Shown in pieces: positions 20,209-64,000 of a DNA stretch of 64,000 bases. Position 1 is the first letter of the stretch, and the number at the start of each line of letters is the position of its first letter. The DNA comes from Ophelia neglecta (Eukaryota), in contig OZ260661.1 in NCBI GenBank assembly GCA_965285935.1, positions 109,058,001 through 109,122,000 of the forward strand, read 5' to 3'. The position numbers and the translations under genes were made by a program. The notes below the pieces were generated by a model. That model searched no databases and was not told the origin of the DNA. It saw nothing but the letters and a program-made list of their open reading frames with translations.

Positions 20209-21702
20209 AAGTGAAACCCATGAAATAAGACCATCCCAGGGACAGGCAAATTATGGTCTGATTTCAGAGGTGGTCTGTTTGGACATTCAAGTTATTATAT
20301 CCGCGAAATGCGGATATTATGTTTTTAGTAGCGCCGCCGCCGCCGCCGATTTTAGTCGTTAACGCGATAACTCAAAAACCATATCGTACATCTTTTTTAA
20401 ATTCAACACAGCCATAGACCTTATTGAGAGGAGGAACTGATTAGATTCTGGTGAAAATCCAATAATTATTAATTAGTTAAAACAATTAATTAATAACGTC
20501 AGAAAAGCATTTTCTGCAATAACACAAAAAATATTTGATACATTTTTTTATAATTTGACACAGCCATAGACCTTATTGAGAGGAAGACCTTTATTTATTC
20601 TGGTGAATTTTTGATAATTATTAATTAGTTAAAATAATTAAATAATTATGTCAAAAACACATTTTCGATCATATATTCCAAAGTATAGATGATATTGGCT
20701 TGAAGTTTTGTGTCATGATTCATGTAATAACTATATACAATCTGTGTAATAAGTTAACTACATGTAGTTAACTTTATTAATGACCTGAAAATAATTAGTT
20801 AAGGTGGTTTTGCATTATTCTTGAGGTCATATGGAACCAACTTTATAAATGACCTGCCTTATTATTGAGGTTATATAGAAGCTACTACAATCTGTGTAAC
20901 AAGTTACTGTGTAATATGTTAACTAGTTAACTTTATTAATGACCTGAAAAAAAATTAGTTAAGGCAGTTTTTCATTATTATTGAGGTCATATGGAACCAA
21001 CTTTATAAATGACCTGCCTTATTATTGAGGTTATATAGAAGCTACTACAATCTTTGTAACAAGTAACTGTGGAATATGTTAACTAGTTAACTTTATTAAT
21101 GGCCTGAAAAAAAATAAGTTAAGGCACTTTTTCATTATTATTGAGGTCATATGGAACCTACTACAATGTGCGTAATAAGTTAACTAGTTAACTTTATTAA
21201 TGACCTGAAAAAAATTTAGTTTAGGTAGTTTTGCATTATTATTGAGGTGTTATGGAACCTACTAATAAGTTCACTAGTTCACTTTATTAATGACCTGAAA
21301 AAAATTAGTTAGGGTCGTTTTGCATTATTATTGAGGTCATATGACACCAACTTTAAGAATGACCTGCATTATTATTGAGGTCATATAGAACCTACTAAAA
21401 TATGTGTAATAAGTTAACTAGTACTGTGTAATAAGTTAACTAGTTTATTAAGGACCTGAACAAAAATTAGTTAAGGTCGTTATCTTTTGTGCCAAATAAA
21501 AACTAACATATTCACTAGCTCGCCTTATGCCATGTTCCCCATTCGATTATTGCACCCATTCGCGGATATACCCCTTGCTGTCGGCCCCCCGACAGCGTTG
21601 GCCTAGTTTTACATTGAAAGTATACAATATTTTCTTTATATGAGTGGTGTGAATTGACTGGTGGTCTTGATAAAGAGGTGGTCTTTGAGGCAGGGTTCAC
21701 TG
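20209..21702. mobile_element. Tc1/mariner-type MITE split by the HINE insertion (pieces about 20209-20291 and 21609-21702)
   Basis: Ends AGTGAAACCC... and ...GAGGTGGTCTTTGAGGCAGGGTTCACTG. The right end is nearly the reverse complement of the left end of the intact MITE at 54199. Confidence 0.7.
20292..21608 (+). mobile_element. Helentron-associated non-autonomous element (HINE, DINE-1/pearl-like) with internal tandem array
   Basis: 5' subterminal IR TATATCCGCGAAATG, (CCG)n microsatellite, AT-rich tandem units (ATTATTGAGGTCATATGGAACC, GTTAACTAGTTAAC), 3' subterminal IR CATTCGCGGATATA, stem-loop GCTGTCGG-ccc-CCGACAGC, and a CTAGTT end. Inserted at T residues without a TSD. Confidence 0.8.
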
Positions 21703-21842
21703 TCTTACTTATAGTTCTAATCCCAAATTAAAATCACTCAAATTGTGCATAGATTTAATTTAAATTCATGGTAAAACCCTAATTTTGTTAAAAAATATTC
21801 AGTTTTGTATTCCTAGCACTTAAATTATAACTTTCCTGTAGG

Positions 21843-22939
21843 TTGTTGTTGTTTGGGGTTTTACGTGGCTTTCAACACTTATCGGTCATATCGCCACTGT
21901 GCCTACAGGGTGAGAAATAAGAACAAAATTTCTACTGGCCCACAGGGCCAGTAACTTTCAAAATCAGCAGGCCCTGCTCAAATTCAGCAGGCCCTGAAAA
22001 AATGACATGCTGTGGGAGGGGGGGGGGCACATGCTTATTTCTTTCCCTGTACGCGGTACATAACCCGCCAAAAATCGATCCATGTTGATAGACCGTTAGA
22101 TGCGTAGTACGGAATAGTTTCACTGGAAGTTGCTCCAGTGACATATGCACAAGCTCGAAGCACTTTATTCAAAGCCGATTAACGCAAGTGCTGCGCCTTG
22201 AAACAACACAACAAGAAGAATGTCTAAGACCCGCAAGAAGTTATATTTACGTGTTGCAACATTTTATTTCATATATAATCCGGATTAAATATTTAACATC
22301 AGGTTGGTTGAGTTCAATCGCGGCGAATTCCGATGCAAGCTATAGAGCCGGGAAGCGAAATGTACGGTACGGTACGTACAATTGGACAAAATGGACTAGA
22401 TGCAGTCAATGGCGTAGCCTGTTACAATGCGTTATGCGCAGAGCGGTGCGCGCATAATCAATATGTAAATAGTAGGACGATAATACATTGACCTGTTGAC
22501 AGCACTTCGACAATGCTCATTTCTTTAATGTTCTAGCTGTACATACATAAAGTATTATAAGTGGAGCCAAATTTGAACTGGCCCGCCGTGCCAGCTGGGT
22601 AGAGTTTCAATTGGCCCGCCGCTAAAACGATAGGCCCCGGGCCTACGGGCACATGCTTATTTCTTTCCCTGGCCTACTTGTGACAGGTGGCTCAATGCCC
22701 TCTTTATAGTGCTGCCTCACTGAAGTACCTGCCGTAGACACCATACAGGAAACCCCACCCAGTCACATTATACTGACACCGGGTTGACCAGTCCTGATTC
22801 TACCCCCGAAATACCGGGCGTCTGGCAAGGGAGCTATCAGTACCTATTTTTAAGTCTTAGGTTTGACGCGATCGAGGTTCGAACCCCGATCTCCCACTTG
22901 CGAGGCAGACACCCTAACCACTTGGCCACGCTTTGGTGG
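21843..22939 (-). mobile_element. tRNA-derived SINE with Meta/MESC-type central domain, interrupted by a DNA transposon
   Basis: Minus strand has A box TGGCCAAGTGG, B box GGTTCGAACC, central GGACTGGTCAACCCGGTGTCAGTATAATGTGACTGGGTGGGG and an (AAC)n tail. Perfect 15-bp TSD TAACTTTCCTGTAGG at 21828-21842 and 22940-22954. Confidence 0.9.
21906..22671. mobile_element. Non-autonomous TIR element (CAGGG termini, 5-bp TSD; hAT5-like) inserted in the SINE
   Basis: Left TIR CAGGGTGAGAAATAAG and right TIR CTTATTTCTTTCCCTG. TSD GCCTA at 21901-21905 and 22672-22676. An extra internal right end lies at about 22026-22049. Confidence 0.75.
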
Positions 22940-24681
22940 TAACTTTCCTGTAGGAAACCCAGAAAACAAACCTGAGAAAAAAACTTGAGATTTGACATTA
23001 CCAGTTTATTTACAACCTACAAACATAGAACATCGAACACATTTGGATCATGGAACACTGGGTGGATGTCTTCATCACAATAATACATGTTATATGCTCT
23101 AGATAACAAACAGTACACATTTTAACACATAGTTGGAAACTTTACAGTTTTGTAGGTTTCCCTTCCACTGCACATTTCCTTAGACAGAAGGGGAGGGGGG
23201 GGGGCTATTTTGCTTATATATAGACAGAGGGAGAGGGGAGGTTTTCTCTATAATTCTACCCTTCAGCTTTAAAATTTGTGGCACGTGTAGAAAAAGGCAT
23301 GGCTGGAATTTAGCACCTGCCCATCTACCCTTGTTTGGTAGGTGTTTTGGGCTGAATATGGAATTTTTAAAACGGCACATTGGATCTATTATGCATCTTA
23401 TGCATGTTGGCTCTGGTAGGCTGTTGAAAAAACCTTAGTTTCCACATCAGCCTTTTGGTGGGAGGGGTAACCCCCTCCCCACACTTCCCCCTCTTCTAGT
23501 TTTCTTATTTTTCATGTGTTGACAGTGTTGATGCTAGAGTTATAAAATGAAATGTACAGAACCCATAAATAAACATATAAAGCAAATCAGCTTTAACAAA
23601 CAATACACAAAAGAATGTTCTAAAATGTATATCAAAATATTAAAATACAATATTACTTAGCAAAATAAAAAATCATTTCTCTGATAAAAGGAAAATGATA
23701 CATGTTTTACATGCATGCTCAAAATAACCTGGATCCGGATCTTAAATCCCACGATAAAACAATATATCATAAATATATAACATAGGGGAACAACGGGAAG
23801 AACAAGAGAACACATAAGGTGGTTACACATAGCCAGTTTTTTTAGCAACATTTCTGTTCCTGCACCACATGATAGTGCGCAGGAGAACTCTATGTTTAAT
23901 TGACATTTGACATGTTTATTTCATTTAGCAGCAATCCAGTGCAATGCACCTTCTTTTTACAAACTTCTCCTTCATTAATATGTTCTTTTTTACAACTGTG
24001 CCTTTTAGCCCTATTGTACATTACCTTAGCATCATGGGTTGACCTACAGAATGAAAATAAATGTCCGTCCCCTCCCCCCACCAGTTACAAAATGAAACTG
24101 CCCTTAATTAATTTGGGGGATTCTGATTAACTACAATTTGGCACATTTAATTTTGATGGATATGCTAAAATTTCATGATGATTTTTATATGTATAAACTA
24201 CAATAATCTTTAGTTTGGCGCAGAAAATGTAGCCGGTTTCATGTCAAATGCCAAATCCACCAACTTTTCCTGGCCAACAACATGCAATTTACAGTACATG
24301 TTATATACACAAAACTAGTCATCTGTATTCATATATAACTGAGACATGAAAACTAATGAAAAGGTAACTGTTATATCAATAAATGCAGAGATAAATACCT
24401 TGTCTTGGTTCCACTTTGTTCCCTTTCCCTTTATCCATAAATGAGAGCATTAAAAGTGTAAACAAATATTTAAAAATAAAACAGCTACTTAAAATCTGGA
24501 TTATACAACAATATCAACTAGTGACACTTATTTACTAGTTTCAAACAAATCAAAGTTCAGCTGAGGTTTTTCTCTTAATTGCTTTTGTTTTCAGGAACAT
24601 AAATAGATGTTAGGTATTAAAATGGGGGTCTGTCCAGCTCCTCCCTTTAAGGTCTTTCTTTCCTTTTTCTTTCTTTTCCTT

Positions 24682-32078
<7,397 letters not shown>

Positions 32079-43248: not shown

Positions 43249-45054
43249 TCACAAAAGTCCTGCCTTTTTTAGCACAAACTGTCCTATTTCTGCAAACATT
43301 CCGGTGGACCTTTTTAAAGTTTCTTCATCTTTATACTCTGGAGGGTTAGGATGTGTCCAGTGGAAAGCATTCACATCCTCTCTCCAGTTTTTTATAGAGT
43401 TCATAGCTACGTGATCTTTTGTCATATTATGATAATCTTCTACCCACAAGGGGTGGCACTTTTGCTCATAGCAAATAACCTGTAGACGTCGATCTATTCT
43501 AAGGAGGTGAGGGTATTTTTCAAGGAGCTTATACGGCATCATGACTCCGGTAAATCCATGCACATCATTATGTAAGGTCCTCATAGAGTCCCTGAATATC
43601 TGCCAGAAAGGAGCGTTTCTTTTACCATAAGACAGGCCAAAATTGACCGAGTCGGGGAAAGGCCAACTCCAGTCGACCCAGTCATAACTGGCCACTGCGT
43701 CATATCCGCGATCTTCTTGTGTCAGAGGCTTCACCCAGATGGCGTCTGTGTCAGTGTAAACGCCGCCATATTTAATCATTAGATCCACTCTAATGACGTC
43801 AGACATCAGTGCCCTATACCAAGGTTCTATCACCCCTTGGTATAAGCTATACGGCGGGCTACGGTAGATATATTTCACTCTATCGCTCAATTTTGGGTTG
43901 TTCTTTACCTTCTGCCACAGATCTCCAGCTGGTTCCTTGTCACCATGAATATAGACAACATCCACCTCCACAACGTACAACATACTCAGCAAGCTGAGGT
44001 AGAAAACAAAGTCCATTGGCCCACCACCAATCCAAACCATGTGGCCAATGTTGGGCACCAGCTCATCGTAAGACGGGATGGGGTGCCTGATTTCTTCGGT
44101 GCCGTAGAAAATCCGTCTGCTGAGTTTACCAAAAGGGTCATTAAGCTCCCATATGTCCATGGGTGTAAAGTAATTAAAGTTTCCACCTTTCACAATCATA
44201 CATTTCGGTGTAAGGTTTCCTTCATAAACGTGATGAACCTGGCTGCAACTTGCTCTGCTTGTGCGAAATTTGTCGTTTCCCATCACCATGTTGTATGTAA
44301 CATTTACATTTAGCACCCCGCCTCTCAAAATAAAATATCCTTCGCTGTTACCTGTCTCGAGAGCCATTGTCAAATCTACTCTCCTTTCCACTGCTTGGAG
44401 TTCCACCATCCACGTGTTCTCTCCAACAAACATTCCTCCCTCGCCAGCCTCGGACAATGTTTCTATTATAATACTCAGTCTGTCCTCATCACTACCAGAA
44501 CAAAATTTCTTTTGGCGGTCAGACATCTGTTTCATTATAAAAAATGGATTATCATGCTTCAGGTCCTCCAACCATAGGTTGTAGAACATTTTATCAATTG
44601 TTGGTTTTCGCTCATAATGTAAAACAACCTTATCAGGTTTTACTGTTCGATAAACACTTTGAATGGTAAGATAATGCTTAAACTCGAACCATCTTTCTCC
44701 ACACCACATCATGTGAACGTTTGGTGGCACGAGGTCAGGTTGAAGCATTTCAGCGTAAGGGTTCACCCTTTGTGCTCTTTGCCCATCCAAATCCATTGGG
44801 AACTTAATATCTACCTGAGTTATGTCTGCCACATCGTTTGAAAAAAGCGGGCTGTGTTTTTCGAAAGCCTCACTGGGCTTTTCAGCAGCGAAATTCGTTT
44901 TAATACTCTGCAGCAAAGATGTTTCCTTGTTTCCCATCCAAGGGGATGTACTCTTGTTAACCGTGCTTATGAGGGCGGTAAAGACGAGGAGTATGCCAAC
45001 ACCGACAAATGCTCGCATAATTCCCCTTCGGGGTATCAGGCTAGTCACATTCAT
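43249..45054 (-). CDS. Type II membrane glycosyltransferase family 32 (alpha-1,4-glycosyltransferase-like) protein with two tandem GT32 domains, 601 aa
   Basis: Uninterrupted ORF with an N-terminal TM anchor (AFVGVGILLVFTALISTV). Domain 2 has VPNIGHMVW...FYLSLLS...SDVIRVDLMIKYGGVYTDTDAIWVKPL (DXD motif). Domain 1 is a parallel, degenerate copy. Acceptor at 45120 and an upstream donor near 46931 imply a non-coding 5' exon. Confidence 0.88.
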   Translation of the reverse strand: MNVTSLIPRRGIMRAFVGVGILLVFTALISTVNKSTSPWMGNKETSLLQSIKTNFAAEKPSEAFEKHSPLFSNDVADITQVDIKFPMDLDGQRAQRVNPYAEMLQPDLVPPNVHMMWCGERWFEFKHYLTIQSVYRTVKPDKVVLHYERKPTIDKMFYNLWLEDLKHDNPFFIMKQMSDRQKKFCSGSDEDRLSIIIETLSEAGEGGMFVGENTWMVELQAVERRVDLTMALETGNSEGYFILRGGVLNVNVTYNMVMGNDKFRTSRASCSQVHHVYEGNLTPKCMIVKGGNFNYFTPMDIWELNDPFGKLSRRIFYGTEEIRHPIPSYDELVPNIGHMVWIGGGPMDFVFYLSLLSMLYVVEVDVVYIHGDKEPAGDLWQKVKNNPKLSDRVKYIYRSPPYSLYQGVIEPWYRALMSDVIRVDLMIKYGGVYTDTDAIWVKPLTQEDRGYDAVASYDWVDWSWPFPDSVNFGLSYGKRNAPFWQIFRDSMRTLHNDVHGFTGVMMPYKLLEKYPHLLRIDRRLQVICYEQKCHPLWVEDYHNMTKDHVAMNSIKNWREDVNAFHWTHPNPPEYKDEETLKRSTGMFAEIGQFVLKKAGLL

Positions 45055-51998: not shown

Positions 51999-54900
51999 TC
52001 AACCGAGCGGCGCCCTCATGTCATACAGGGTCGGTGCCTGGACTATGATTCCAAACGTTCCCACTAAACAAGCGGCCGTGAAGATCCATAGAAACAGACG
52101 ATCCAACACCATAGCAACGAATTGCCAGTCTTGCTTCACCTGAAAAAAATAAGCAATACATATCATTGAGAGAATTAAGTCATCTAACTTTTAATTGATC
52201 ATGATTGAAGTTTTCTAGTTGGGTCTTGTGTATTAGAACGCTTTATATGATACTGGGCTGGTTTACTGATTTATCCATGCCGTCTGGCTAATATGCATAA
52301 TAATAATACGTTTGAAACATGGCAGTTTATCCTTTTTTACATGTATTAGGAACTGGTCGCAAAATATGGCAAGAGGGGTGGAGGTAAAAAGTGGACGGGG
52401 AATTCTTTTTAATCAAGAATGGGTGGCAAGAGAAAATAAATTCAAGGAGGAGCGAGCGGGTCCTTCAGCAATAACGTTAAAGTTAAGACTGTTTTGTGAA
52501 AATGGTTCAATGTTGTGTTTTATTCCTCACTTTAGTTTCCACCGTCAATATTACAGGCGTCTTATACAACACTCTCAAGTCGAACTCACCGGTAATAATA
52601 TATTAAGATAAATATATCATTTAGGCCTACTAGATATAAAAATATGCCCGCTAAACTACATGCGAATTCCCAATCCCGGCAAAAATGCCATATAATGACT
52701 AATCCCTTATGAATCAGATGCTTAATATAGATAAAAAATGTAGAAAAATTATAATACCGGAACTGGAGACTAAAACAGCCATCCTGGTAACTTCTAACTT
52801 CTAGTTATTTAAGGTTTGAAAATATTATTTGAGACTGATCTATTTGAGCCTGAAACTGTAAACATACAGACTAATAAATCTAGCTATCCTGCTTTCTTAC
52901 CCCATTGAACTCGTCCTGCTGTTTCATGTGATCTGCTATAAATGATACTCCAATCATTGCTTGCATAACCGAAGGCGGAAGTCTACTTTGACGTCTGCCC
53001 ATTGGATTCATAGTATCTGGGTCAATTAAAATGTCATCCGTGCCGCCGCGCATACTCGAACTGCACATATAATTCCCGTGAATATTATCCATTGTGAGAT
53101 CTGTTGTCTCTCCATATGGATCGCGAATTTCGACACCATCGCACGTGCGCACGGCCACTTTGGGAAACTTGTCCCGTTTATTCTGCGGCCGCCTCATCAA
53201 CAGCAGTCGCGGAAGGACATTCAAAAATAGTTCCATAATCCACGGTGACATGACATGTGTTGAGGGCGACCGGAAATGTATGTTTAGCACAAACACCGTC
53301 ACTATGATGGAACAAGTTACCAGCACCATGGTAAAAAGCAGATATTTTCCTATAAGTGGCGTGGCCAATGAGGTCGGCGGATTAATCTCGGCCACCAACA
53401 AGAGGAAAATGTTCAAGGAATTCAGAATTGTTATACTCAGGGTGATTTTCTCTCCTGAATTAGCAGGAATATAGAACACCAAGAGAGTCACTGAACAAAT
53501 GGCGACACATGGGAGGATAAGATTGACTGTATAAAATAGTGTTTTCCTCCGAATTGTTATATTGAATTTAATATCCGGGTAAGGCTCGTTACAGCAAGGG
53601 TAATATTTCTCGTGTTTTTTGGCCATCACTTCAAGAAGATCCCACTCGGTACTTTTGTAATAGTCTGTCAAATCTATTCCGTCCTTTATCACGTCCATGT
53701 CTTGGTTAGAATCCTTAAGTTCCTTGTGTCTAATATCCACGGAGTAGCCATCATATGTCCAACTGCCTATTTTTAAAGTACACATTTGCTCATCAAATGG
53801 AAAGAACTCCACGTCAATGGGACAGAGGCTTTTATAGATGGCCGGTGGCTTCCAAGTTACGAGCCCGTCGTTTGTAATGGTGGCCTTGGTCATCAACTTA
53901 ACCGTGAAATTGCCATCCGCACTGAAAGCATAAAAAAGAAGTATTCCTTTGTGGGCTAGTATTCGTAAAACAGGTCATAAGTTATCAGGGATCTCTAAAA
54001 TACCAGGATTATTTTTCATGCTTTTTGATTATAGCATTCATTTGCAGTCATACGGTGCTCCTCAAGGAGGAATATCCCAAGTACAGCTAGGCTACAGTCT
54101 CAGGATATATGGAGGCTGTTTTAATAAACGCCTTCCAGTGATTAGCCTTCGAATAACCAATTAACATATCTCAAAATACAGGTATAATTAGGTATATACA
54201 GTGAAACCTGCCTTAAAGACCACCTCTTTATTCAAACCACCTGCCAATGCAGACCACTAATATAAAGACCATAGTGTGCACTTTCAAAGTAAAAAAAACC
54301 GTGTGTATACAGACCACCTTTATAATCAGACCAGTATTTTCCAGTCCATTGGGTGGTCTTACACAGGTTTCATTGTACATATAAAGGTATATATTGGTTG
54401 TAAATGTATTAAAAAAACTGAAAACATGCCATCCGATAAAAGGAGCTATTGTGGGCCATGTCGCTTCCCTTTCTGCATTAGCCTGTGTCTTTAATTGCAT
54501 TACATCGTCTTCGGCTAAAAATATTCAATTTAATTGGCAGTTCTCTCACTTTCTGAACATAATGGCAAACTGCACCAATAGGCCTCTACCATACTCTGTC
54601 ATACGCCGATGTAATTCAGGGAAAATATGTGTGTGTGTGTTGAAACAATGAATTTTTAGTTTGTGGACTTGAGCACCCTTTAACAAGGTATGCTTGTATT
54701 CTCCAGGCGACATCCGGGTATCCTTCGCCATTTTCATTATTTTTCACATTTGCAAGCAGCCACTGGATCACGCTGTGTTCAGATATTTCCATGTTATGCC
54801 CTTCCACATAGTCCTAAGCCTATTTTACTTCAAACGTCATGACGTTTACAAAAGAATAGCTATAATATAGGCATCAAATACCCTGCAATATCTTAACTAT

Positions 54901-57118
54901 AGCAATGAAGATATGGTATTTTTTTATCTGCATGACAGAAAGGGTCAATATTAATTTGATTTATGCCAAGTAATAAAATTGCCCATACATCCAACTGTGG
55001 AAATAAATGTGTAAATTTATTATAGTGTAAAAATATCTGTGCTTCAGTAGGATAATGATTTTATGTAATTGTATGGTTGCCCATTTAACAATACTATTAG
55101 AAATCATTAAAAATGGCGCATTGAAATGTCCAGTAACATATTTGCGGCCATCATTTAGGGAATGGTTATATAAACTCATTTTTAAATGCTTAAGGAATTA
55201 ACGGTATCGCCCGGTGCATTCGGACGTAGGAACAAGAATATATTCTTAAATCCTGGCCCCATTTGCTAGAAAAAAACTAGACATAAGTTTTAACATGGTC
55301 TAAAATGTTCTTAGCTGAGAATTTTCTTACAGCTGATGTGATGAAACAAATAGGCTTAGATGAGGCACAGCAACCTTTTGGGCTGTTATTGCCATTATAA
55401 TTGGAAACTATTTTGTTTCCAAACTTACTTAAGGTAACATTTCTACTTGCATAAGTAATACTTAATTATATATATAAACAAGCTAAGCCCCAGAATGTTT
55501 CTGATCCTCAAATCGTGCTCTAAAATTAAACTCAAGTTTAAGACGAAACAAATCTACCATTTTTTTCGTAGTAAAAACTAAGCAAGGTTTTTTCTGGCAC
55601 ACGGGGAAAGATCTAATTCCTCTGACAAGCAGACTTCAAATGAAGTTATGTATTATACATGTATCTAAGCGACATGCGGGCTGTCGGTTTGGTTTAAAAC
55701 CACGAATGATCCAAGTAAAAGATCAAACATATCAAGGTGTTGGGCGCGGCATTAAATTAATGTGCTTGGACACCGTGAGGCAGCTTTCACGAGGTGCCTT
55801 ATTCTCATTCCGGAAAATGGCCCAATATAAGTGTGGCGGATTGCTGACAATTCTGTTGTTTATTACCAACTGTGCTTAAGTCGTCTGCTGTCGTTTACTC
55901 GTATTTATAAACGAGGGCATAAATACCTGTTATACAAGACAATGTCCGGAAGCCATATATCGTTACTGGGGACGTACAGCCGATCGATCCCGCCGTACGC
56001 GGCCGAGTTCCAGGTCAATTTATAGTCGTACCATTGCTGTAAAATAAAATAGCACGTTAAAGATATAATTCCATTGAAGTTAGATATAGCAGGGAATGTG
56101 AAGGATTAACTGTTGACTTGATAACGCCGTCTTCCTGGGCTTATGGCGTTTTTAAAGCTACATTTTCTCAAATTATATAGTATGGCTTTATCGCCCAAGC
56201 TTTCACGACCAGCCACAAATTTCCTACTGGTATGAACTTTCCGCCCTGATGGTCATCCAATATTACCATATCGTGTTTTCCCGCCATGCTCAATTTTAAT
56301 GCTTTATCAAATGACTATGGATTCCGCAGCCGTCTGCATCACAAAAGCATAAGACGACCCCGGACGTTTGTTTTACGACAAGTAAGTGATATTTAGTGCC
56401 AGACCGCTTGCACAAATCAGAAAAAGGAACCGACTGTTGGCAAAGAATGAACAGCAAATCGATGCAAAGGTTGGCTCGATCCTGTCTACCCATCATGTAT
56501 TTCCAGAACAAAGTTTCGGGGGAAAATGGATGAACTATTATTGGTTGGTAAGAAAAAAAGTGAGATTGGACTTCGGGTTGTGCTTTGATATGTCATAATA
56601 GTTAAATTATAGTATAGGTGAACCTGGTGGTCGATGCCACAGAAATATATCATAACTGTTCACACCAAGTACAGTAATATACATGTATAAATAACTTGGC
56701 GAAACCCATGGAGGTCCCGCGAAAGGTCAACGTTCCCTTCCATAACAACAATCAGAGACAAATGCCAAACAATCTGAAATCATATGGCATCATCTTTTGG
56801 TGCAGCTCATCAGCAGAGTAAACTCGCCTTGTCTCATTACCAAAAGCCAACAAAATAATCCATCATACTCCACTCTCATGCAATAAACTTGTTAACGTGC
56901 CGGCTACGAAAGGGCGACTTGACAATGGAGCTAGGACATCAAGCCCTTGTCATCGAAACAACTACCCTACTATCCTAAGCATTTTGTTATCCAATGAACC
57001 ATCTTTTCCAACCCGCAGTACCCTGCACTAATACAAATCAATATGATAGCAAGAAAAATTTGCAGCAACTTACCTGTTCTAGCCAAACATTAGTCGTCAT
57101 GATTTGATTCTTTTCGTC
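51999..57118 (-). CDS. Nicotinic acetylcholine receptor alpha subunit (Cys-loop, cation-type), 5'-partial
   Basis: Exons 57118-57074 ([15 protein letters not shown]), 56036-55927 (QWYDYKLTW...[11 protein letters not shown]), 53921-52901 (Cys-loop [22 protein letters not shown], loop [11 protein letters not shown]1-M3) and 52139-51999 ([20 protein letters not shown]...*). Phases are consistent. Vicinal cysteines mark an alpha subunit and GEK precedes M2. Signal-peptide and N-terminal exons were not found in the window. Confidence 0.95.
54199..54375. mobile_element. Tc1/mariner-type MITE
   Basis: TIRs CAGTGAAACCTG and CAGGTTTCATTG, TA on both sides, internal GACCAC repeats. Confidence 0.8.
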
Positions 57119-57459
57119 CTGAAGAAGAAACAAGTGTTTATTGATAATCATGTGTAAGTGTAATCAACAATATCTATATTTAGGATATATATATACAGTT
57201 TGGGAAGATTTATAATACAAAAATAATAACACGAGGTCACTTCAGCTTGTAATTTATGGTTTCTCTAAAAATCGATGACCAGTTTGTTATACATATAAAT
57301 CACCCAGGAATGTGCAATGTGCAATGTGGAAACACCGGGATACAGTGTAATAATATTTTTTGCCAAATTCCTGTCTCTGAGTAATATTACTACAGCGCGA
57401 GTAAAGCGATAAGGGTACACCCCGGCGAATATCTCTCCTGCACCACAGCCAGGAATCAA

Positions 57460-58870
57460 AAGACAAGCTAATGCAGAAAGGCGGTACCCTATTTCGAAAA
57501 GTAAATGTCCAAGGATTCCGAAGTGAAGAAAAACCGTTAAGCCTTCTTTAACTACTCGACCTTCAAGCTTTTAAGCCAAGATTAATGGTAATCGAAAGAA
57601 ACCAGCCGGGAATAAAACCAAGAACGACGACGAAAAGGCTGATCCTTTCAATAATACTTTTTTACCAATATTCACCAATGAGGACACAAAAAATGGATTT
57701 AGTTTCGAAAACGAAAGTGCAAGGAATCTCTTGGCACCCTAGGGCCTACTCTTGAAAGAAAATGTCAGGAAACAACTCAAGAGTATCAAGACAACCAAGA
57801 GTCCATGGCCTGATAAGACTCCACCCTGGGTACTGCCGGGACTGTCAAAACCGCTAGGCATCGGCACCACATTATTCAACAGATGTCTCCATGAGGGTGT
57901 TATATGAAAAGACTGGAAAGTCAGCCATGTGACCACAATCTAAAAAAGTTTACCCGGGTGATCAACGTCAAATTTCCGACCATTTAGTCTTACTACAGTG
58001 ATCTGCTTGAGATTGGAGACATTTGTTAGAGAAGCATTAGTGAGCTATAATCTTAAGCAACCCCAACTCACTGCCAGATCGCGTTCCCAAAAGGCAGATC
58101 GGACGTAATCAGTTCGTTTGCCAGACATTGTACACTCCTTGATTCACCTTTTTGTTGAAGGCAAGACGATTTTAAAATTATACATGAGCAGCAGGACTGT
58201 GACCTGGTTGGATTGATGGACTGGTCCCAAGCCTGGCAGCTGCAATTCTCTCTAGGCAAATGAAAAATTATGCATCGGGGCACACACAAAAGGCAGCGTC
58301 AGTACCACAGGATCAACACTGGAAAAGTGACAAACTTAGAGACAATCACAGAGGAGAGGGAACTCGGGATAGTCTTCAACTGTTAGCTGTTTTTCTACAA
58401 ACACACGGAGAAAGCGAAGTTCAGGACCAACAGAGTGCTGACGCTTTCCCAACTTGATGCATTCACAATGCGCCTTTCGTTTAAAGGACTGGTGAGTTCT
58501 CGCTTGGAATACGCCATTGTGACTTGGTGTCCTCTACACTTCAAGGACTCGCGTCTCATAGGAAACATGAAGAGCGTTTCAAAACACATCATCTCTAAAG
58601 GCCCAGATACCGTCGAGAGAAGGGAGACATGGTCGAGGTCTACCAGATCCTCAACATTAAACTCCAAGTCCCTGACGGTTACCTGATAAGAGACCAAAGC
58701 ACAATGACTAGCGGACATAGCCTGAAACTCAAGAAACGGTACGCTGCCACAGAGCTAAGGAAAAAAATTATGTCTTCGCTCTGCAAATGGTCGATCCATG
58801 AGACGGACTTCGTGGCGAAGTTGTCACTGCCCCGACATTTCAGTCGAGGCTGGATTGTGTTGGAAACACA
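57460..58870 (+). mobile_element. Decayed CR1-like LINE reverse transcriptase (ORF2) fragment
   Basis: Frameshifted remnants include KSPWPDKTPPWVL, WKVSHVTTI, NFRPFSLTTVICLRLETFVR, LMDWSQAWQLQF, FKGLVSSRLEYAIVTWCP, RRDMVEVYQIL and TSGHSLKLKK. It lies antisense to nAChR, upstream of the most 5' exon found, so probably within an intron. Confidence 0.85.
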
Positions 58871-60294
58871 TGTGGTACCCTTTCGATTAAGGTTACAGGC
58901 ACAGCGGTTCCTAGTAGCGGATGGCAGAAAAATATATAGCGTCTGGGCCATCCGAAGTCCCAGCAATGTGATATGTATGCCATGGTATTTGGTATAAATA
59001 TCACAAGGGACCAATCGATTACTCAACTCCTGTGGAAATGTTGTAATAAAACCCTTCCACGTGAATATTTCGCCGAAATACTTGGCATAACAGTAGTATG
59101 TCACCTGTTCTATCATTCCCTTTTCGATGTTTGCCTATCACTCCGATTTTAAGATAGTTTTATGCGCTGGAAATAAGTAAGCACTGATGTATTCAAATGC
59201 CAATGAGTTGAATCGGGGGATATTTGTTTCTCAGCCAATCACCGCTGCTATCACCTACCTGTAAGGAATTCGCGATTGTGATTGGATCTCAGCCCGGTGA
59301 TATATACCGGTATTACCCAGTTGGAACCGACCAAGTCCGTTTCACCAAGTTCCATGGCAGCTTATAACGATGTCACTATCGAGTGGTTCGCCATTGCTCA
59401 CTCGTGTCAAGATGTTTACCCTGGGACGCCCTTTCAAGGGTCGAACTGGCTAGAAAAAAAGTATAATTCGAAGTCACCATTGATTGGTGACAATGACGTC
59501 ACATCAAGCAAACATTATACCTTTTCATCTAACTTTTTGTTCACTGCATGTGGTAATAAATTTCTCTAAAAATACTGAAAAAATCATAATTGCCAGTGCG
59601 CCAGGTGTTTATGTTATGTTCATGCACCACTGAGCGACGAAATCCAGCACCGAATTTATTCAATTTGGCGAGGGCCGACAACGTAAGAAGAACTCACTCG
59701 GAATTAAAGTTTCGGTATAACAGTAACATGGCAACTGGAGCATGTTGAAAAAACGAATTGTCAGTTAGGGAGAATGGTAACCGTCGGGCATTGGGAAAGC
59801 GACCTATAGGCGTCTCCGAAGTTTTGTCCGACTCCGAATGCCGAAGAAAAGACCACGCAGAAAGTGAACTATGTCACACAGAGAAGTCCGTAAGTAGTAT
59901 TGCTCTAAAGTCACCTTGCTCAGTTCTTCACAAACCACTATTCACATCACAGATATACAGTATATGAGTTAGCGAACTTTTACCGGGGCTTTCAAATATG
60001 CATGTCAAGGTTAGACTTGTTAGTGTAATTTAGGTCCCATGTTTAATAGAAACGTCTATAAGTATGCAGCTTTATGTGGGCAAAGTAACAGATTAAATTG
60101 CAAAAATCAAAGCCTAAAATAGCTGCTAGATTCAATACATACATGAATCATAATACACAATTAAGTGAAATATGTGACTCCTGTTCTAGACTGACTATAA
60201 ATGATCAAGTTATAAACGCATAAATATCACCGATAAAAAAATAACTATTCTTGCTATATTGTTTGCAAGCAATTATAAGTGTGGCAACAATGAG

Positions 60295-60345
60295 TCTCTC
60301 TCTCTCTCTCTCTCTCTCTCCTTCTCTCTCTCTCCCTCTCTCTTT
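60295..60345. repeat. (CT)n microsatellite
   Basis: Imperfect TC dinucleotide run of about 50 bp. Confidence 0.9.
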
Positions 60346-63300
60346 CGTCTCGACTAAAGAAATAACATTGCTATTCGGAAAAATAAAATAACTTGGATGT
60401 ACCCTTAAATATCATAGGTTCTGATGTATCATATATCAAAACGGTGCATACGGACTAAGATTTTTCTATATTATCAACTTAATTATCGCCTTACTGTAGA
60501 CAAATATTGGAAAGCACACCGCATACGGCCTTCAGTCAGCTCCTGTCAGGCCTATATGTGCCTCCATTTTTAGATGTTTGATAGGCTGAAGAGGGAAAAA
60601 TCAGCGATTGGTTTGCTCAACCTATGAAATTCAACTTGCTTTTATTTTCGTCTGCACAACGTTTTCGGTTTTATAGCAAATATAAAACAAGGTTACACAG
60701 GAAGGGGTCCAAAATGCCACAAGGCCTTGCCACTCTGATCATAATCGTGGCTCGTAAGGCATCACTCGGGATACATCCATCAGAACCCGACTAGAGTTCT
60801 TATCAATGGGGGACATACAATAGTTTACAAGGCAATAAGTTTTGACCGCTTATTTCCTCTTGTGGCTAAAAACAAGTTTTGTAAAATGGCTTCTCGGCTG
60901 TATCGAAAAGTAAGAGATATCAAAAAGCATAGCAGATGGCAGGTCAGCTTCATCATCTCCGTCTTCGAGATCTTACGGGAGTGATTTGGTATCATTCATT
61001 TATGACTACGTATTTTCTCCTGAGACTGCAGCACGCTCCATCTTCTGTCATCATAGGAACTCAGATAATGACTTCAAACTTTCCATAACACGGAGACGTG
61101 GGCTTCTTGTTCCGGCTACCAATCGTCAAGATGCAAACAACACCCCGGCCCGCACTCCGCCAATTTAGCGGGTACCCATGCTTGTTCACCACGTTTGAAA
61201 ACGTTTTCAGGTTTTTTACCCCCCTAACTCAGGCTTGGTGAAATATCATCCCTATTCTCAGGCTCGATCCAGGAAGCATCTAACCCCCTTTTATAGTAAC
61301 TTCCCAGCCCTTTTCTCGGCATAAGCTTGTAAAAATACCCTTTTTTTCAATTTCTCGGGAGGCTGATAAAAAAGACCCCTTTTTTCAATTTCTCGGGAGA
61401 AAAAAAAGAAAATGTTCCCCTTTTTCGGGAATTCTCGGGCCCGAGATCAAAGCCCAAAAAAAGTACCCCTTTTACCGAGAAATCGTGAACGGGCATGCGC
61501 CCCCCCCCCCCCAACCCAGGGAGAGGGGGGGGGGACAACAGAAACCCATATGACAGGAGAGTTTCGAGGCCCGGGTCAAATCAGTCATGACGTTCAGGGC
61601 CTCATTAAAACTTGTTTCGAGTTCTTTCGTGACAAGCTGGAGATCCACCTCCGGCCGCCGGAAATAAAAACATCTGGCTGGCACACCAACTGACAAAAGG
61701 TCGTGGGGTGACAGAAATAAAATCTGTCCGCTTTCAGTTTATTTCAGTAAGCTTGTTACTACGAATCTATCGTTATCGATGTCATTCTTTTATTACATAT
61801 TGTAGTTTAATGAAGATTATCAACATTATATAAACCTAACCCCGCCAATTTTGGCGTGCTAATATATTTGACATCGCTTGGCGATGCTGGTTTAGTTTAA
61901 AAAGACAATATCAGTAGGTTCTCACGTACACACCATGTGTATATACGAACCTACTGGTATTGTCTGTCGGCAAGACTAAAACAAATAACACTGCTATACG
62001 AAAAAGAATTGGATGTAGATCTACTATTAATATATCATCGGTACTGATAGCCTATATTATATAAATACATATTATATAACTATATAAGCAATGACTTTAT
62101 GGGACATGTTAAAACTGGGCAAAGAACAATGATATTAACATTGTATTAACCTAATTATATCTATAGAACGATAGGCCTAGTGGAAATCACCCGTATAAGG
62201 CCTTCTGTCAGCTCCTATCAGGCCTATAGGCCTATAGACCTATTCCTTTTAGGTGCTTGGTAAATGGAAAAAGGAAACATCAACGATGGATTTGTTCTAC
62301 CCGTGAGGGTTAAATTTTAATATTTGAAAGTTTGGCAGTTAGTGGGGTAAAACAAGAAAATATTTTGATAAAGATACTACAATTATGATTTACTACTCTT
62401 TATTTATCCTTATTATAGCTACTGCATCGAAATTTTGAGTTGCATATGCTAAGCAGCCATTTGGGGAGGAACAACAAGGGGCTATTCTCATAGCCGGAGC
62501 GCCGAAGAACGCCTCCCACAGACCTCTGTTGCCCCATGATAATGGTATACTACTATAGCATACTATACTAAGAGTTCTGATTAACATTTTTGAAATCTTT
62601 AATGGTAGGCTCCCATCAGTTTACTTGCAAAAAATGTAAAAACTGACATCCCATGGTTCCTGTCGTTTTTTCGAATAACTATATATAGGATTTCGAGACA
62701 GTATCCCTAATAGAGCTTCGCGACCGGGGGACTTAAAATAGAATTGTTTCCAGACCGTGGGAATAACTCCCTGTTTAGGGTTTGGGTTAGTAACAGTAGT
62801 CTAGAGGAGACCTTCTAACCAAGGGACTCGCATTAACTTTTTCCTCGCTCAAAATGCTTAAAGACGTGAAACGGTCTAATAAATTATACAAAAAGGTCAC
62901 CATAATTCATGGCTGCAGAATACCACAACATTAATTGAGCGAACTTTGTGATTGATTACTACACCAAAGCCCCCCCCCCCCCACCACCACCACCACCACA
63001 ACCTCCCCCCCCCCCGCCTGCACCACCTCCGCCACATACAATTGACGCATTTCGTGAGAGCAGTAATAGTTGTATTCGTTTCATTATAGGACGATCAAAC
63101 GCCATCCAATCTTTCTTTATCGCCTATAACTCATAATATGGAGGAAGGATGGATTGTTCCGCGTGTTTCTTTTCATATCGTCAGTGGCCTTCCCCGCAGG
63201 GTGGGAGTGGGTGCACATTGTTTAACTGCACAATTACGTACAATAAACTAAATTGCACGTTGAGCAGTTATCTATAAATAAACCAGCCACGTCAATGAAA

Positions 63301-64000
63301 TTAACCCAAACAGGTAATAGATTTCAATGGTTAACCATTTACTTTTTGTAACTCCCCGCATAGTGTACGCTCCCATACCGTGTACGCGCCCTAGACAACC
63401 CGCCATGAAAATAATAACTGTAAATCATTTTAAGAGGCCGATAGGATGAAAACGATAAGATTATGTCTAACATCTCATTCCTAAAAGTTTATTAATTGTT
63501 GTTTTATTCTCCTCAAACAAATGAGAGCTAAAATAAATATACAGGCATGTTAAAATAAATAAACACATACTTTGTCAAAGAATATAAACTTAGTGGCACA
63601 TTATATTTATTGCATTAGTCAAACATAAAACACCGCTATAATCATACATTGCATATTTTACTATCTTGAAAATACCTCTTACTACGATGGCCTATATATT
63701 CACAAGAAAATAGCGTTTTATACAGAAAAATGTTAAGCACTAGATCGTGAAGCTTAAGGACATATCTTTCACAGTCGAAAATCATTCCACTCCCCTGCGG
63801 GAAAGGTTGAAATAAGATCACAATCTCATAAGTTATCCAATAATATCAAAGTTCTCACATCAAAATAATCGTACAAGCTGTCCCAAAAACTGTTTCTTGT
63901 TTCCATAGGAATATTACAGCCACAAAAGATGACTAAACGGACAAGAAACAGATTCTGAACGAAACAGAAAAGTTACTTTATCACAGGGATTATATAAGTA

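What the first reader, a model, noticed from the sequence alone, without database searches (positions are those of the whole stretch)
53380..53460. nAChR alpha subunit with Asn replacing the 9' gate leucine of M2 (L9'N, plus 12'N and 22'N)
Seen in sequence: M2 reads [26 protein letters not shown]. Counting from K0', position 9' is Asn (codon AAT, minus strand 53422-53420), 12' is Asn (AAC, 53413-53411) and 22' is Asn. The alpha7 reference reads [26 protein letters not shown]. Established: the 9' Leu forms the hydrophobic gate of Cys-loop receptors, and engineered polar substitutions there (e.g. alpha7 L9'T) raise agonist sensitivity, slow desensitisation and can cause spontaneous opening. AAT is at least two nucleotide changes from any Leu codon, so a single base-call error is unlikely. 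The frame, splice sites and binding loops A, B, C and D are intact, which argues against a pseudogene. Inference: a natural hypersensitive, slowly desensitising or leak-type subunit, possibly defining a subfamily with a polar gate.
Basis: partly seen in the sequence, partly recalled or inferred. Interest (0 to 1): 0.8.

Follow-up and report, generated by a model that had tools for sequence, protein, structure and literature searches.

The report
Annelid nicotinic receptor with polar gate
An intact acetylcholine-receptor gene in this worm genome has asparagine where nearly all channels of this family have the pore-gate leucine; the change is conserved across annelids, including the most abundant such transcript in the leech nervous system, and appears undescribed.

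Summary
On the minus strand, M2 of a nicotinic alpha subunit has Asn at 9' (AAT, 53422-53420), 12' (AAC, 53413-53411) and 22' (AAT, 53383-53381). A gapless alignment to human alpha4 confirms the register. Contigs from three DNA runs of another haplotype show the same codons.

The gene is intact: five GT-AG exons, about 505 residues, with exon 1 about 15 kb beyond the window. All ACh-binding residues and the cation-selectivity residues are present.

This is not a private mutation. 64 database clusters share the ILNSLNIF...EINPP pore, and a nested subgroup of 8 has Thr at 9'. Named members are all annelids: Paralvinella, Ridgeia, Helobdella (two genes) and Hirudo nAChR4 and nAChR6. They form one clade, with or without the M2 columns. 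The Asn codons vary synonymously, and dN/dS is 0.04-0.15 where it can be computed.

In this genome, 1 of 61 nAChR-like loci has Asn at 9'. Hirudo nAChR6 is the most highly expressed nAChR transcript in the leech CNS.

The alpha7 comparison and the leak phenotype are not. The function is inferred, not tested. I found no description of this clade in the literature searched.

The parts
57074..57118 (-). Coding exon 2 (45 nt), carrying loop D with the complementary-face Trp (NVWLEQ)
   Evidence: tblastn with annelid orthologues. Splice sites cag|GAC...CAG|gtaagt. Open translation.
55927..56036 (-). Coding exon 3 (110 nt, ends in phase 2), carrying loop A (WLPDIVLYN)
   Evidence: Acceptor ttttacag|CAA, donor AG|gtattt. 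The split codon AG|T gives Ser, as in the orthologues.
52901..53921 (-). Coding exon 4 (1021 nt): Cys-loop, loop B, loop C with the vicinal Cys pair, M1, M2, M3 and the intracellular loop
   Evidence: Pfam Neur_chan_LBD 3e-36 and Neur_chan_memb 3e-52. Acceptor ctttcag|T. Donor GGG|gtaaga. There is no second copy of this exon in the window.
53378..53455 (-). M2 pore helix from -2' Gly to 23' Pro. E-1' and E20' are kept. Asn is at 9' (53422-53420), 12' (53413-53411) and 22' (53383-53381). Ile is at 13'.
   Evidence: register; reads; clade-diagnostic positions.
53459..53461 (-). -4' codon AAT (Asn) where canonical subunits have the cytoplasmic-ring Asp (PSDSGEK becomes PANSGEK)
   Evidence: The deepest clade member, P0059, still has Asp.
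53780..53824 (-). Cys-loop (C-x13-C)
   Evidence: 8 translation. Conserved across the clade.
53579..53602 (-). Loop C: Y190-equivalent, the vicinal Cys-Cys that marks an alpha subunit, and the Y198-equivalent
   Evidence: translation ([13 protein letters not shown]). The Y190-equivalent and both Cys are invariant in 26 of 26 clade rows; the Y198-equivalent is Tyr in 22 and Phe in 4.
51999..52139 (-). Coding exon 5: M4 and the stop codon TGA
   Evidence: Pfam Neur_chan_memb 1.7e-09. Acceptor tttttcag|GTG. Translation.

Best explanation
This is the single-copy orthologue, in this annelid genome, of a conserved annelid-specific alpha subunit of the nicotinic acetylcholine receptor. Shown: it keeps the full ACh-binding aromatic box and the vicinal Cys pair, so it should bind ACh. 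It keeps E-1' and E20' with no anion-type changes, so it should conduct cations. In the mid-pore, the near-universal 9' Leu is replaced by Asn (Thr in one nested subgroup). A fixed set of other changes accompanies it in M2 (-5'A, 3'M, 6'T, 12'N, 13'I, 15'L, 18'V, 22'N), in M1 and in M3. Inferred mechanism: each such subunit puts a polar side chain into the hydrophobic girdle that normally keeps the closed pore dry. This lowers the barrier to wetting and shifts the closed-open equilibrium toward open, giving higher ACh sensitivity and slower closing or desensitisation. The bulkier Ile at 13', with Leu at 16' and 17', keeps enough of a hydrophobic gate for the receptor to stay agonist-gated rather than leaky. 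It probably works as a principal alpha subunit of a major neuronal receptor, most likely alongside Leu-9' partner subunits.
For: Identity and integrity. Register. Reads. Conserved clade: 45 of 118 top hits and 64 of 212 proteins overall carry N9', all named ones annelid. The N9' rows form one side of a branch at support 99, with M2 and without M2. Purifying selection: AAT/AAC turnover at all three Asn codons among seven orthologue loci; dN 0.09-0.25 with saturated dS, and 0.04-0.15 where computable. Polarity is what is kept: the T9' subgroup is nested in the N9' rows. Coordinated pore remodelling: 9 of 21 clade-diagnostic positions lie in M2, 3 in M1 and 3 in M3. Binding and selectivity residues are conserved in the clade: W149, Y190, the Cys pair, E-1' and E20' in every row, the Y198-equivalent as Tyr or Phe. 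Expression of orthologues: Hirudo nAChR6 (P0017) is the most highly expressed nAChR contig in the leech CNS transcriptome (PMC6054404). P0015 and P0035 are full-length ORFs on contigs of about 2 kb, so they are spliced transcripts. Biophysical basis: in muscle AChR, mutations at 9', 12', 13' and 16' raise unliganded opening in proportion to lost hydrophobicity, additively over subunits (PMC10757554).
Against: No functional data exist for any member. No RNA run was found for this species, so expression of this particular gene is not shown. The co-substitutions might fully compensate the gating effect, or the Asn side chains might hydrogen-bond and close the pore as well as Leu does. Subunit partners and stoichiometry are unknown. 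Most clade members are unnamed metagenome or Logan sequences, so 'annelid-only' rests on four named species plus this genome.
Confidence: 0.6

Rival explanations
1. Gating is compensated and the change mainly tunes permeation. Here the gating equilibrium is restored by the co-substitutions, and the mid-pore Asn ring, together with loss of the -4' Asp, mainly changes what passes: conductance, Ca2+ permeability, rectification, or block by divalent ions, polyamines or pore-blocking toxins.
For: Nine M2 positions changed together and then froze, which looks like a re-engineered pore rather than one gain-of-function hit. The cytoplasmic-ring Asp at -4' was lost in most members. From established knowledge, not tested here: rings of charge set conductance in nAChRs, and pore Asn residues control divalent block in other channel families.
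Against: In every tested pLGIC, polar 9' substitutions act strongly on gating (PMC10757554). Nothing here measures permeation. E-1' and E20', the main selectivity and conductance rings, are unchanged.
Confidence: 0.2
2. One reading: a leak-type subunit. Receptors that contain it open spontaneously and supply a tonic cation current, with ACh only modulating it.
For: Polar 9' substitutions progressively raise constitutive opening as more subunits carry them. If the receptor were a homomer, five Asn would line the gate. The subunit also has the complementary-face Trp of loop D.
Against: The orthologue is the most abundant nAChR transcript in the leech CNS. From established knowledge, constitutively active nAChR mutants are neurotoxic. 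The ACh-binding residues are under strict constraint, which a ligand-independent leak would not need. V13'I adds hydrophobicity next to the Asn. No other locus in this genome has a polar 9', so in a heteromer the ring would be only partly polar.
Confidence: 0.1
3. A non-conducting or regulatory role. The subunit would sequester partners or act as a dominant modulator, or the pore would have been reshaped to resist an environmental or endogenous channel blocker such as annelid-derived nereistoxin-type compounds.
For: This is speculation. Nereistoxin is an annelid product that blocks the nAChR pore (PMC13409772).
Against: The clade spans leeches, tubeworms and terebellids, which are not known toxin producers. 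The docking model in that paper places the toxin away from 9'. The conserved binding site, selectivity rings and M2-M3 loop argue for a working channel.
Confidence: 0.05
4. An artefact, a private mutation or a decaying pseudogene.
For: None found.
Against: The same codons appear in contigs of three DNA runs that carry other differences from the assembly. All five exons are open with canonical splice sites. The Asn is shared by 64 database clusters with synonymous codon turnover and low dN/dS.
Confidence: 0.01

Closest known systems
Canonical protostome 'alpha-like 1' nAChR subunits and vertebrate heteromeric neuronal alphas (human alpha4, 8ssz_A/5kxi_A); in this genome, the paralogue at L002 (C8)
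   Same: Same architecture, Cys-loop, vicinal Cys pair, aromatic box, GEK motif, E20' and PPTS M2-M3 start. Identity is 64% to L002 over exon 4, and the alpha4 match has E 1e-83. The tree places the N9' clade inside an annelid group of these subunits.
   Different: These have Leu (rarely Ile or Val) at 9', Thr at 12', Val at 13', Phe at 15', Ile at 22' and Asp at -4'. The clade has Asn, Asn, Ile, Leu, Asn and mostly Asn at those positions.
Engineered and disease-causing polar 9' mutants (alpha7 L247T, muscle L9'S/T/A, alpha4 L9'A/S knock-in mice; first and last from memory, muscle data from PMC10757554)
   Same: A polar residue at the same pore-lining position of a cationic nAChR.
   Different: Those are single laboratory or pathogenic substitutions in an otherwise canonical pore, usually Ser, Thr or Ala. 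Here Asn is the wild type, conserved across annelid orders and embedded in a co-evolved M1-M2-M3 set.
Alpo4 of Alvinella pompejana (PDB 8BYI and 8BXF; PMC10338036)
   Same: An annelid nAChR-like pLGIC with an unusual pore, showing that annelid receptors depart from the textbook gate.
   Different: Alpo4 keeps 9' Leu, has a 16' Met constriction, lacks canonical ACh pharmacology and is an isolated orphan. The present clade keeps the full ACh site and changes 9' itself.
C. elegans DEG-3(u662), a polar substitution in M2 that causes neurodegeneration (from memory; a lead, not tested here)
   Same: A polar residue in the hydrophobic part of M2 of an invertebrate nAChR alpha subunit.
   Different: That is a toxic mutant allele at a different M2 position. 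Here the polar residue is the conserved wild-type state.

Membership tests
Cys-loop (pentameric ligand-gated) receptor, nAChR branch | Ligand-binding domain plus a four-helix transmembrane domain | tested here: met
   Pfam PF02931 (3e-36) and PF02932 (3e-52) on exon 4; PF02932 on exon 5.
Cys-loop (pentameric ligand-gated) receptor, nAChR branch | Cys-loop, two Cys separated by 13 residues | tested here: met
   [15 protein letters not shown] in exon 4.
nAChR alpha subunit | Vicinal Cys-Cys in loop C and the aromatic box (Y93, W149, Y190 and Y198 equivalents) | tested here: met
   WLPDIVLYN, GSWTYDG and YYPCCNEPY. W149, Y190 and the Cys pair are invariant across clade rows; the Y198-equivalent is Tyr in 22 and Phe in 4.
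Cation-selective nAChR pore | Glu at -1', no Pro insertion at -2', Glu or Asp at 20' | tested here: met
   GEK and VAE motifs. E-1' and E20' are present in 26 of 26 clade rows.
Cation-selective nAChR pore | Hydrophobic 9' residue (Leu, rarely Ile or Val) forming the mid-pore gate | tested here: not met
   Asn at 9'. This is the finding. It lowers 'canonical pore', not membership of the nAChR family.
   PDB ranking: alpha4 1e-83, alpha6 and alpha3 next, alpha7 6e-65. The nearest non-clade sequences are 'alpha-like 1' subunits.
Annelid N9' alpha clade (defined here) | M2 signature N9', N12', I13', L15', V18', N22', and grouping with the Paralvinella, Ridgeia, Helobdella and Hirudo members | tested here: met
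   All six signature residues are present. The gene sits inside the 25-row core at support 99. Private differences are 3' Leu and 4' Ser where the others have Met and Gly or Ala.
Annelid N9' alpha clade (defined here) | Transcribed and translated in vivo | not testable with these tools
   No RNA run for this species. Expression is known only for orthologues.

The most novel reading that the evidence does not exclude
A main neuronal nicotinic receptor of at least some annelid lineages has given up the Leu-9' hydrophobic gate that is otherwise near-universal in pentameric ligand-gated channels. It would close its pore another way: a gate moved up to Ile-13'/Leu-16', or a hydrogen-bonded Asn 9'/12' ring. 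That would be a natural, anciently conserved alternative gate design and a ready-made test of the hydrophobic-gating model.
Probability: 0.3. Interest if true: 0.85.

Novelty: new variant of a known kind. Interest (0 to 1): 0.68.

Why it matters
The 9' leucine is the textbook gate of Cys-loop receptors. Making it polar in the laboratory, or in patients and knock-in mice, produces hypersensitive or spontaneously open channels. Here evolution fixed Asn there in a whole phylum-level clade and kept it under strong constraint, apparently in an abundantly expressed CNS subunit. The fixed set of accompanying M1-M2-M3 changes is a natural list of candidate compensating residues. Reverting them singly and together would show how much of gating depends on hydrophobicity at 9' and what can replace it. 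It also matters for annelid neuropharmacology, for example the sensitivity of earthworms and leeches to nicotinic agonists and channel blockers.

Tried and rejected
- Exon 1 in the window: motif and tblastn scans of 57119-64000 found nothing. It lies about 15 kb further on.
- An alternative M2-encoding exon that could supply Leu: there is no second copy of exon 4 in the window. A-to-I editing of AAT could give Ser, Asp or Gly but never Leu (inference from the genetic code).
The reads confirm the codon but say nothing about expression.
- Organism names for unnamed clade members: the look-up of encoding contigs gave only ENA assembly codes, and the listing of cluster members gave no names. Taxonomic breadth therefore rests on four named annelid species.
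- Pairwise dN/dS against the window gene: dS is saturated and NG86 is undefined. Only some pairs among other orthologues give a value.
- Literature: Jiao et al. 2019 and the Alpo4 paper do not mention the pore change. A full-text search for the M2 peptide found 0 papers. Searches on annelid, earthworm, leech and Platynereis nAChRs found no functional study of such a subunit.
- Nereistoxin self-resistance: read up and set aside as speculation.
- Earlier notes of this scan: none near this place or by words.
- Not run: the exhaustive representative search, because it is costly, carries no names and would not change the verdict; structure prediction, because a monomer cannot show pore geometry; and complex prediction, because no binding claim is made.
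- All searches used exon 4 by reference, or orthologue proteins returned by the tools.

Full report
**Observation**

The minus strand of 53300-53500 reads ...[33 protein letters not shown].... Counting from Lys 0' (53449-53447):
- 9' is AAT at 53422-53420.
- 12' is AAC at 53413-53411.
- 22' is AAT at 53383-53381.

The register does not depend on counting alone. phmmer against all PDB chains aligns M1 through M3 without a gap to human alpha4 (8ssz_A, E 1e-83), and the Asn sits on alpha4's 9' Leu.

The window holds no N. Logan contigs from three DNA runs of one sample cover 53316-53492 without any differing letter. They differ from the assembly at other sites, including a synonymous TAT>TAC at 53531, so they represent another haplotype or individual. 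A base-call error is excluded.

**Gene model**

The gene has five coding exons on the minus strand, all with GT-AG introns.

| Exon | Position | Content |
|---|---|---|
| 1 | L033:5013-5213 (G000:C1:109137013-109137213), about 15 kb beyond the window's end | signal peptide and first helix; an in-frame ATG 63 nt upstream is an alternative start |
| 2 | 57118-57074 | loop D |
| 3 | 56036-55927 | loop A |
| 4 | 53921-52901 | Cys-loop, loops B and C, M1-M3, intracellular loop |
| 5 | 52139-51999 | M4 and stop |

Exons 2-5 rest. The exon lengths sum to 1518 nt, or 505 residues. Pfam finds both pLGIC domains. There is no second copy of exon 4 in the window that could act as an alternative M2 exon. 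Exon 4 was searched by reference.

**What it is**

The loop C Cys pair and the aromatic-box residues (Y93, W149, Y190 and Y198 equivalents) are present. So are the loop D Trp, the Cys-loop, Glu -1' and Glu 20'. It is therefore an ACh-binding, cation-type alpha subunit. Its closest solved relatives are the heteromeric neuronal alpha4, alpha6 and alpha3, not alpha7.

**It is not a private oddity**

- In the word search with exon 4, 45 of the 118 top hits with a readable M2 carry N9', and 44 of them also carry N12' and N22', in an almost invariant M2.
- Two further searches bring the total to 64 N9' clusters among 212 proteins. A further 8 clusters have Thr at 9'.
- Every named member is an annelid: Paralvinella palmiformis, Ridgeia piscesae, two Helobdella robusta genes, and Hirudo verbana nAChR4 and nAChR6.
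- Mollusc, nemertean, brachiopod, arthropod, tardigrade and Owenia relatives in the same lists have Leu, Ile or Val.

In a maximum-likelihood tree of 94 rows, the N9' rows are one side of a branch (SH-aLRT 99, a single change of state). With all M2 columns removed, they still are (support 99).

In that second tree, the N9' rows group with Leu-9' annelid subunits (Paralvinella, Dimorphilus and unnamed ones) at 97, and with Owenia added at 91. This points to a duplication of the canonical alpha-like gene inside annelids. The result comes from FastTree and should be treated as provisional.

The T9' group is a single clade nested among N9' rows. What is maintained is a polar 9', not Asn as such.

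**Selection**

Orthologue DNA from seven loci shows AAT and AAC interchanging at 9', 12' and 22' while Asn is kept. dN to the window gene is 0.11-0.25 with saturated dS. Where NG86 can be computed among orthologues, dN/dS is 0.04-0.15. The ACh-binding and selectivity residues are conserved across the clade: most are invariant, and the Y198-equivalent is Tyr or Phe.

**The pore was remodelled as a unit**

Twenty-one exon-4 positions are at least 90% fixed in the clade and at most 5% shared with the others. Of these:
- nine lie in M2 (-5'A, 3'M, 6'T, 9'N, 12'N, 13'I, 15'L, 18'V, 22'N);
- three lie in M1;
- three lie in M3.

Most members also lost the -4' Asp. The window gene is unusual within the clade only in having Leu at 3' and Ser at 4'.

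In this genome, which holds over a hundred nAChR-like loci, 61 could be aligned across M2. Of these, 58 have Leu, 1 Val, 1 Ile and 1 (this gene) Asn. The closest paralogue (L002, chromosome C8, 64% identity) has the canonical pore.

**Expression**

No RNA run was found for this species. For orthologues:
- P0015 and P0035 are full-length ORFs on contigs of about 2 kb, so they are spliced transcripts.
- The Hirudo CNS transcriptome paper states that the most highly expressed nicotinic contig is nAChR6 (PMC6054404). By its database name, nAChR6 is P0017, an N9' member.

**Mechanism (inferred)**

In muscle AChR, mutations at 9', 12', 13' and 16' raise unliganded opening in proportion to the hydrophobicity lost, and the effect adds up as more subunits are mutated (PMC10757554).

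A wild-type Asn at 9' should therefore bias receptors containing this subunit toward the open state. Val-to-Ile at 13', with Leu kept at 16' and 17', should pull back toward closed.

Two facts favour a regulated, probably high-sensitivity and slowly closing main receptor over a constitutive leak:
- the orthologue is abundantly expressed in the leech CNS;
- the binding site is under strict constraint.

I cannot exclude that gating is fully compensated and that the change mainly alters permeation.

**Novelty**

The sequences are public but annotated only as hypothetical proteins or 'putative nAChR'. The lophotrochozoan nAChR survey (PMC6896357), the Alpo4 structure paper (PMC10338036), a full-text search for the M2 peptide (0 papers) and four topical searches gave no description of this pore. 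I rate it a new variant of a known kind.

**Limits**

- Function is untested.
- Most clade members are unnamed.
- Trees are unrooted.
- dS is saturated.
- The library searched does not hold most subscription-journal papers.

Noticed in passing
window 54191-54361 (intron 3 of the receptor gene): A short element of very high copy number. Logan word depth jumps from about 10-40 to 1.9e5-3.8e5, with many contigs ending or joining there. It is probably a SINE or MITE.
   Followed up: no
window 20335-29818: An element of about 9.5 kb bounded by long inverted repeats of about 1.0-1.3 kb (20335-21608 against 28799-29818, 92-98% complementary), themselves built of 90-160 nt sub-repeats. The interior has only two ORFs over 90 aa, with no Pfam match. 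It looks like a non-autonomous DNA transposon with long terminal inverted repeats.
   Followed up: partly
window 43249-45054 (-): An uninterrupted 601-aa ORF with a weak match to the DXD glycosyltransferase sugar-binding region (PF04488, 1e-07). It may be an intronless glycosyltransferase gene next to the receptor gene.
   Followed up: partly
G000 loci L030, L046, L049, L057, L065 (C5 and C7): A group of nAChR-like paralogues with another odd pore. Gln replaces the -1' Glu (AQK, GQK or TQK instead of GEK) and Arg sits at 12' (VVLLSFRIFLLN). Their selectivity and gating may be unusual.
   Followed up: no
G000:C2:27.08-27.16 Mb and C2:79.33-79.43 Mb: Two tandem arrays of about eight nAChR-like genes each, in keeping with the known lophotrochozoan expansion. 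The second array has Gln at 11' and QGD in place of the 20' Glu region.
   Followed up: no
proteins P0172-P0180 (unnamed; ENA, JGI, Logan): A subgroup nested in the N9' clade has Thr at 9', and Asn or Ile at 12'. P0169 and P0170 have N9' with Thr at 12'.
   Followed up: partly
proteins P0059, P0182, P0192 (unnamed, ENA): Possible intermediates on the stem of the clade. P0059 has N9' but keeps the -4' Asp and 4' Cys. P0182 has Val 9' with Met 3' and Asn 22'. P0192 has Leu 9' with Asn 22'. Asn 22' alone also occurs in mollusc subunits such as Tegillarca P0150.
   Followed up: partly
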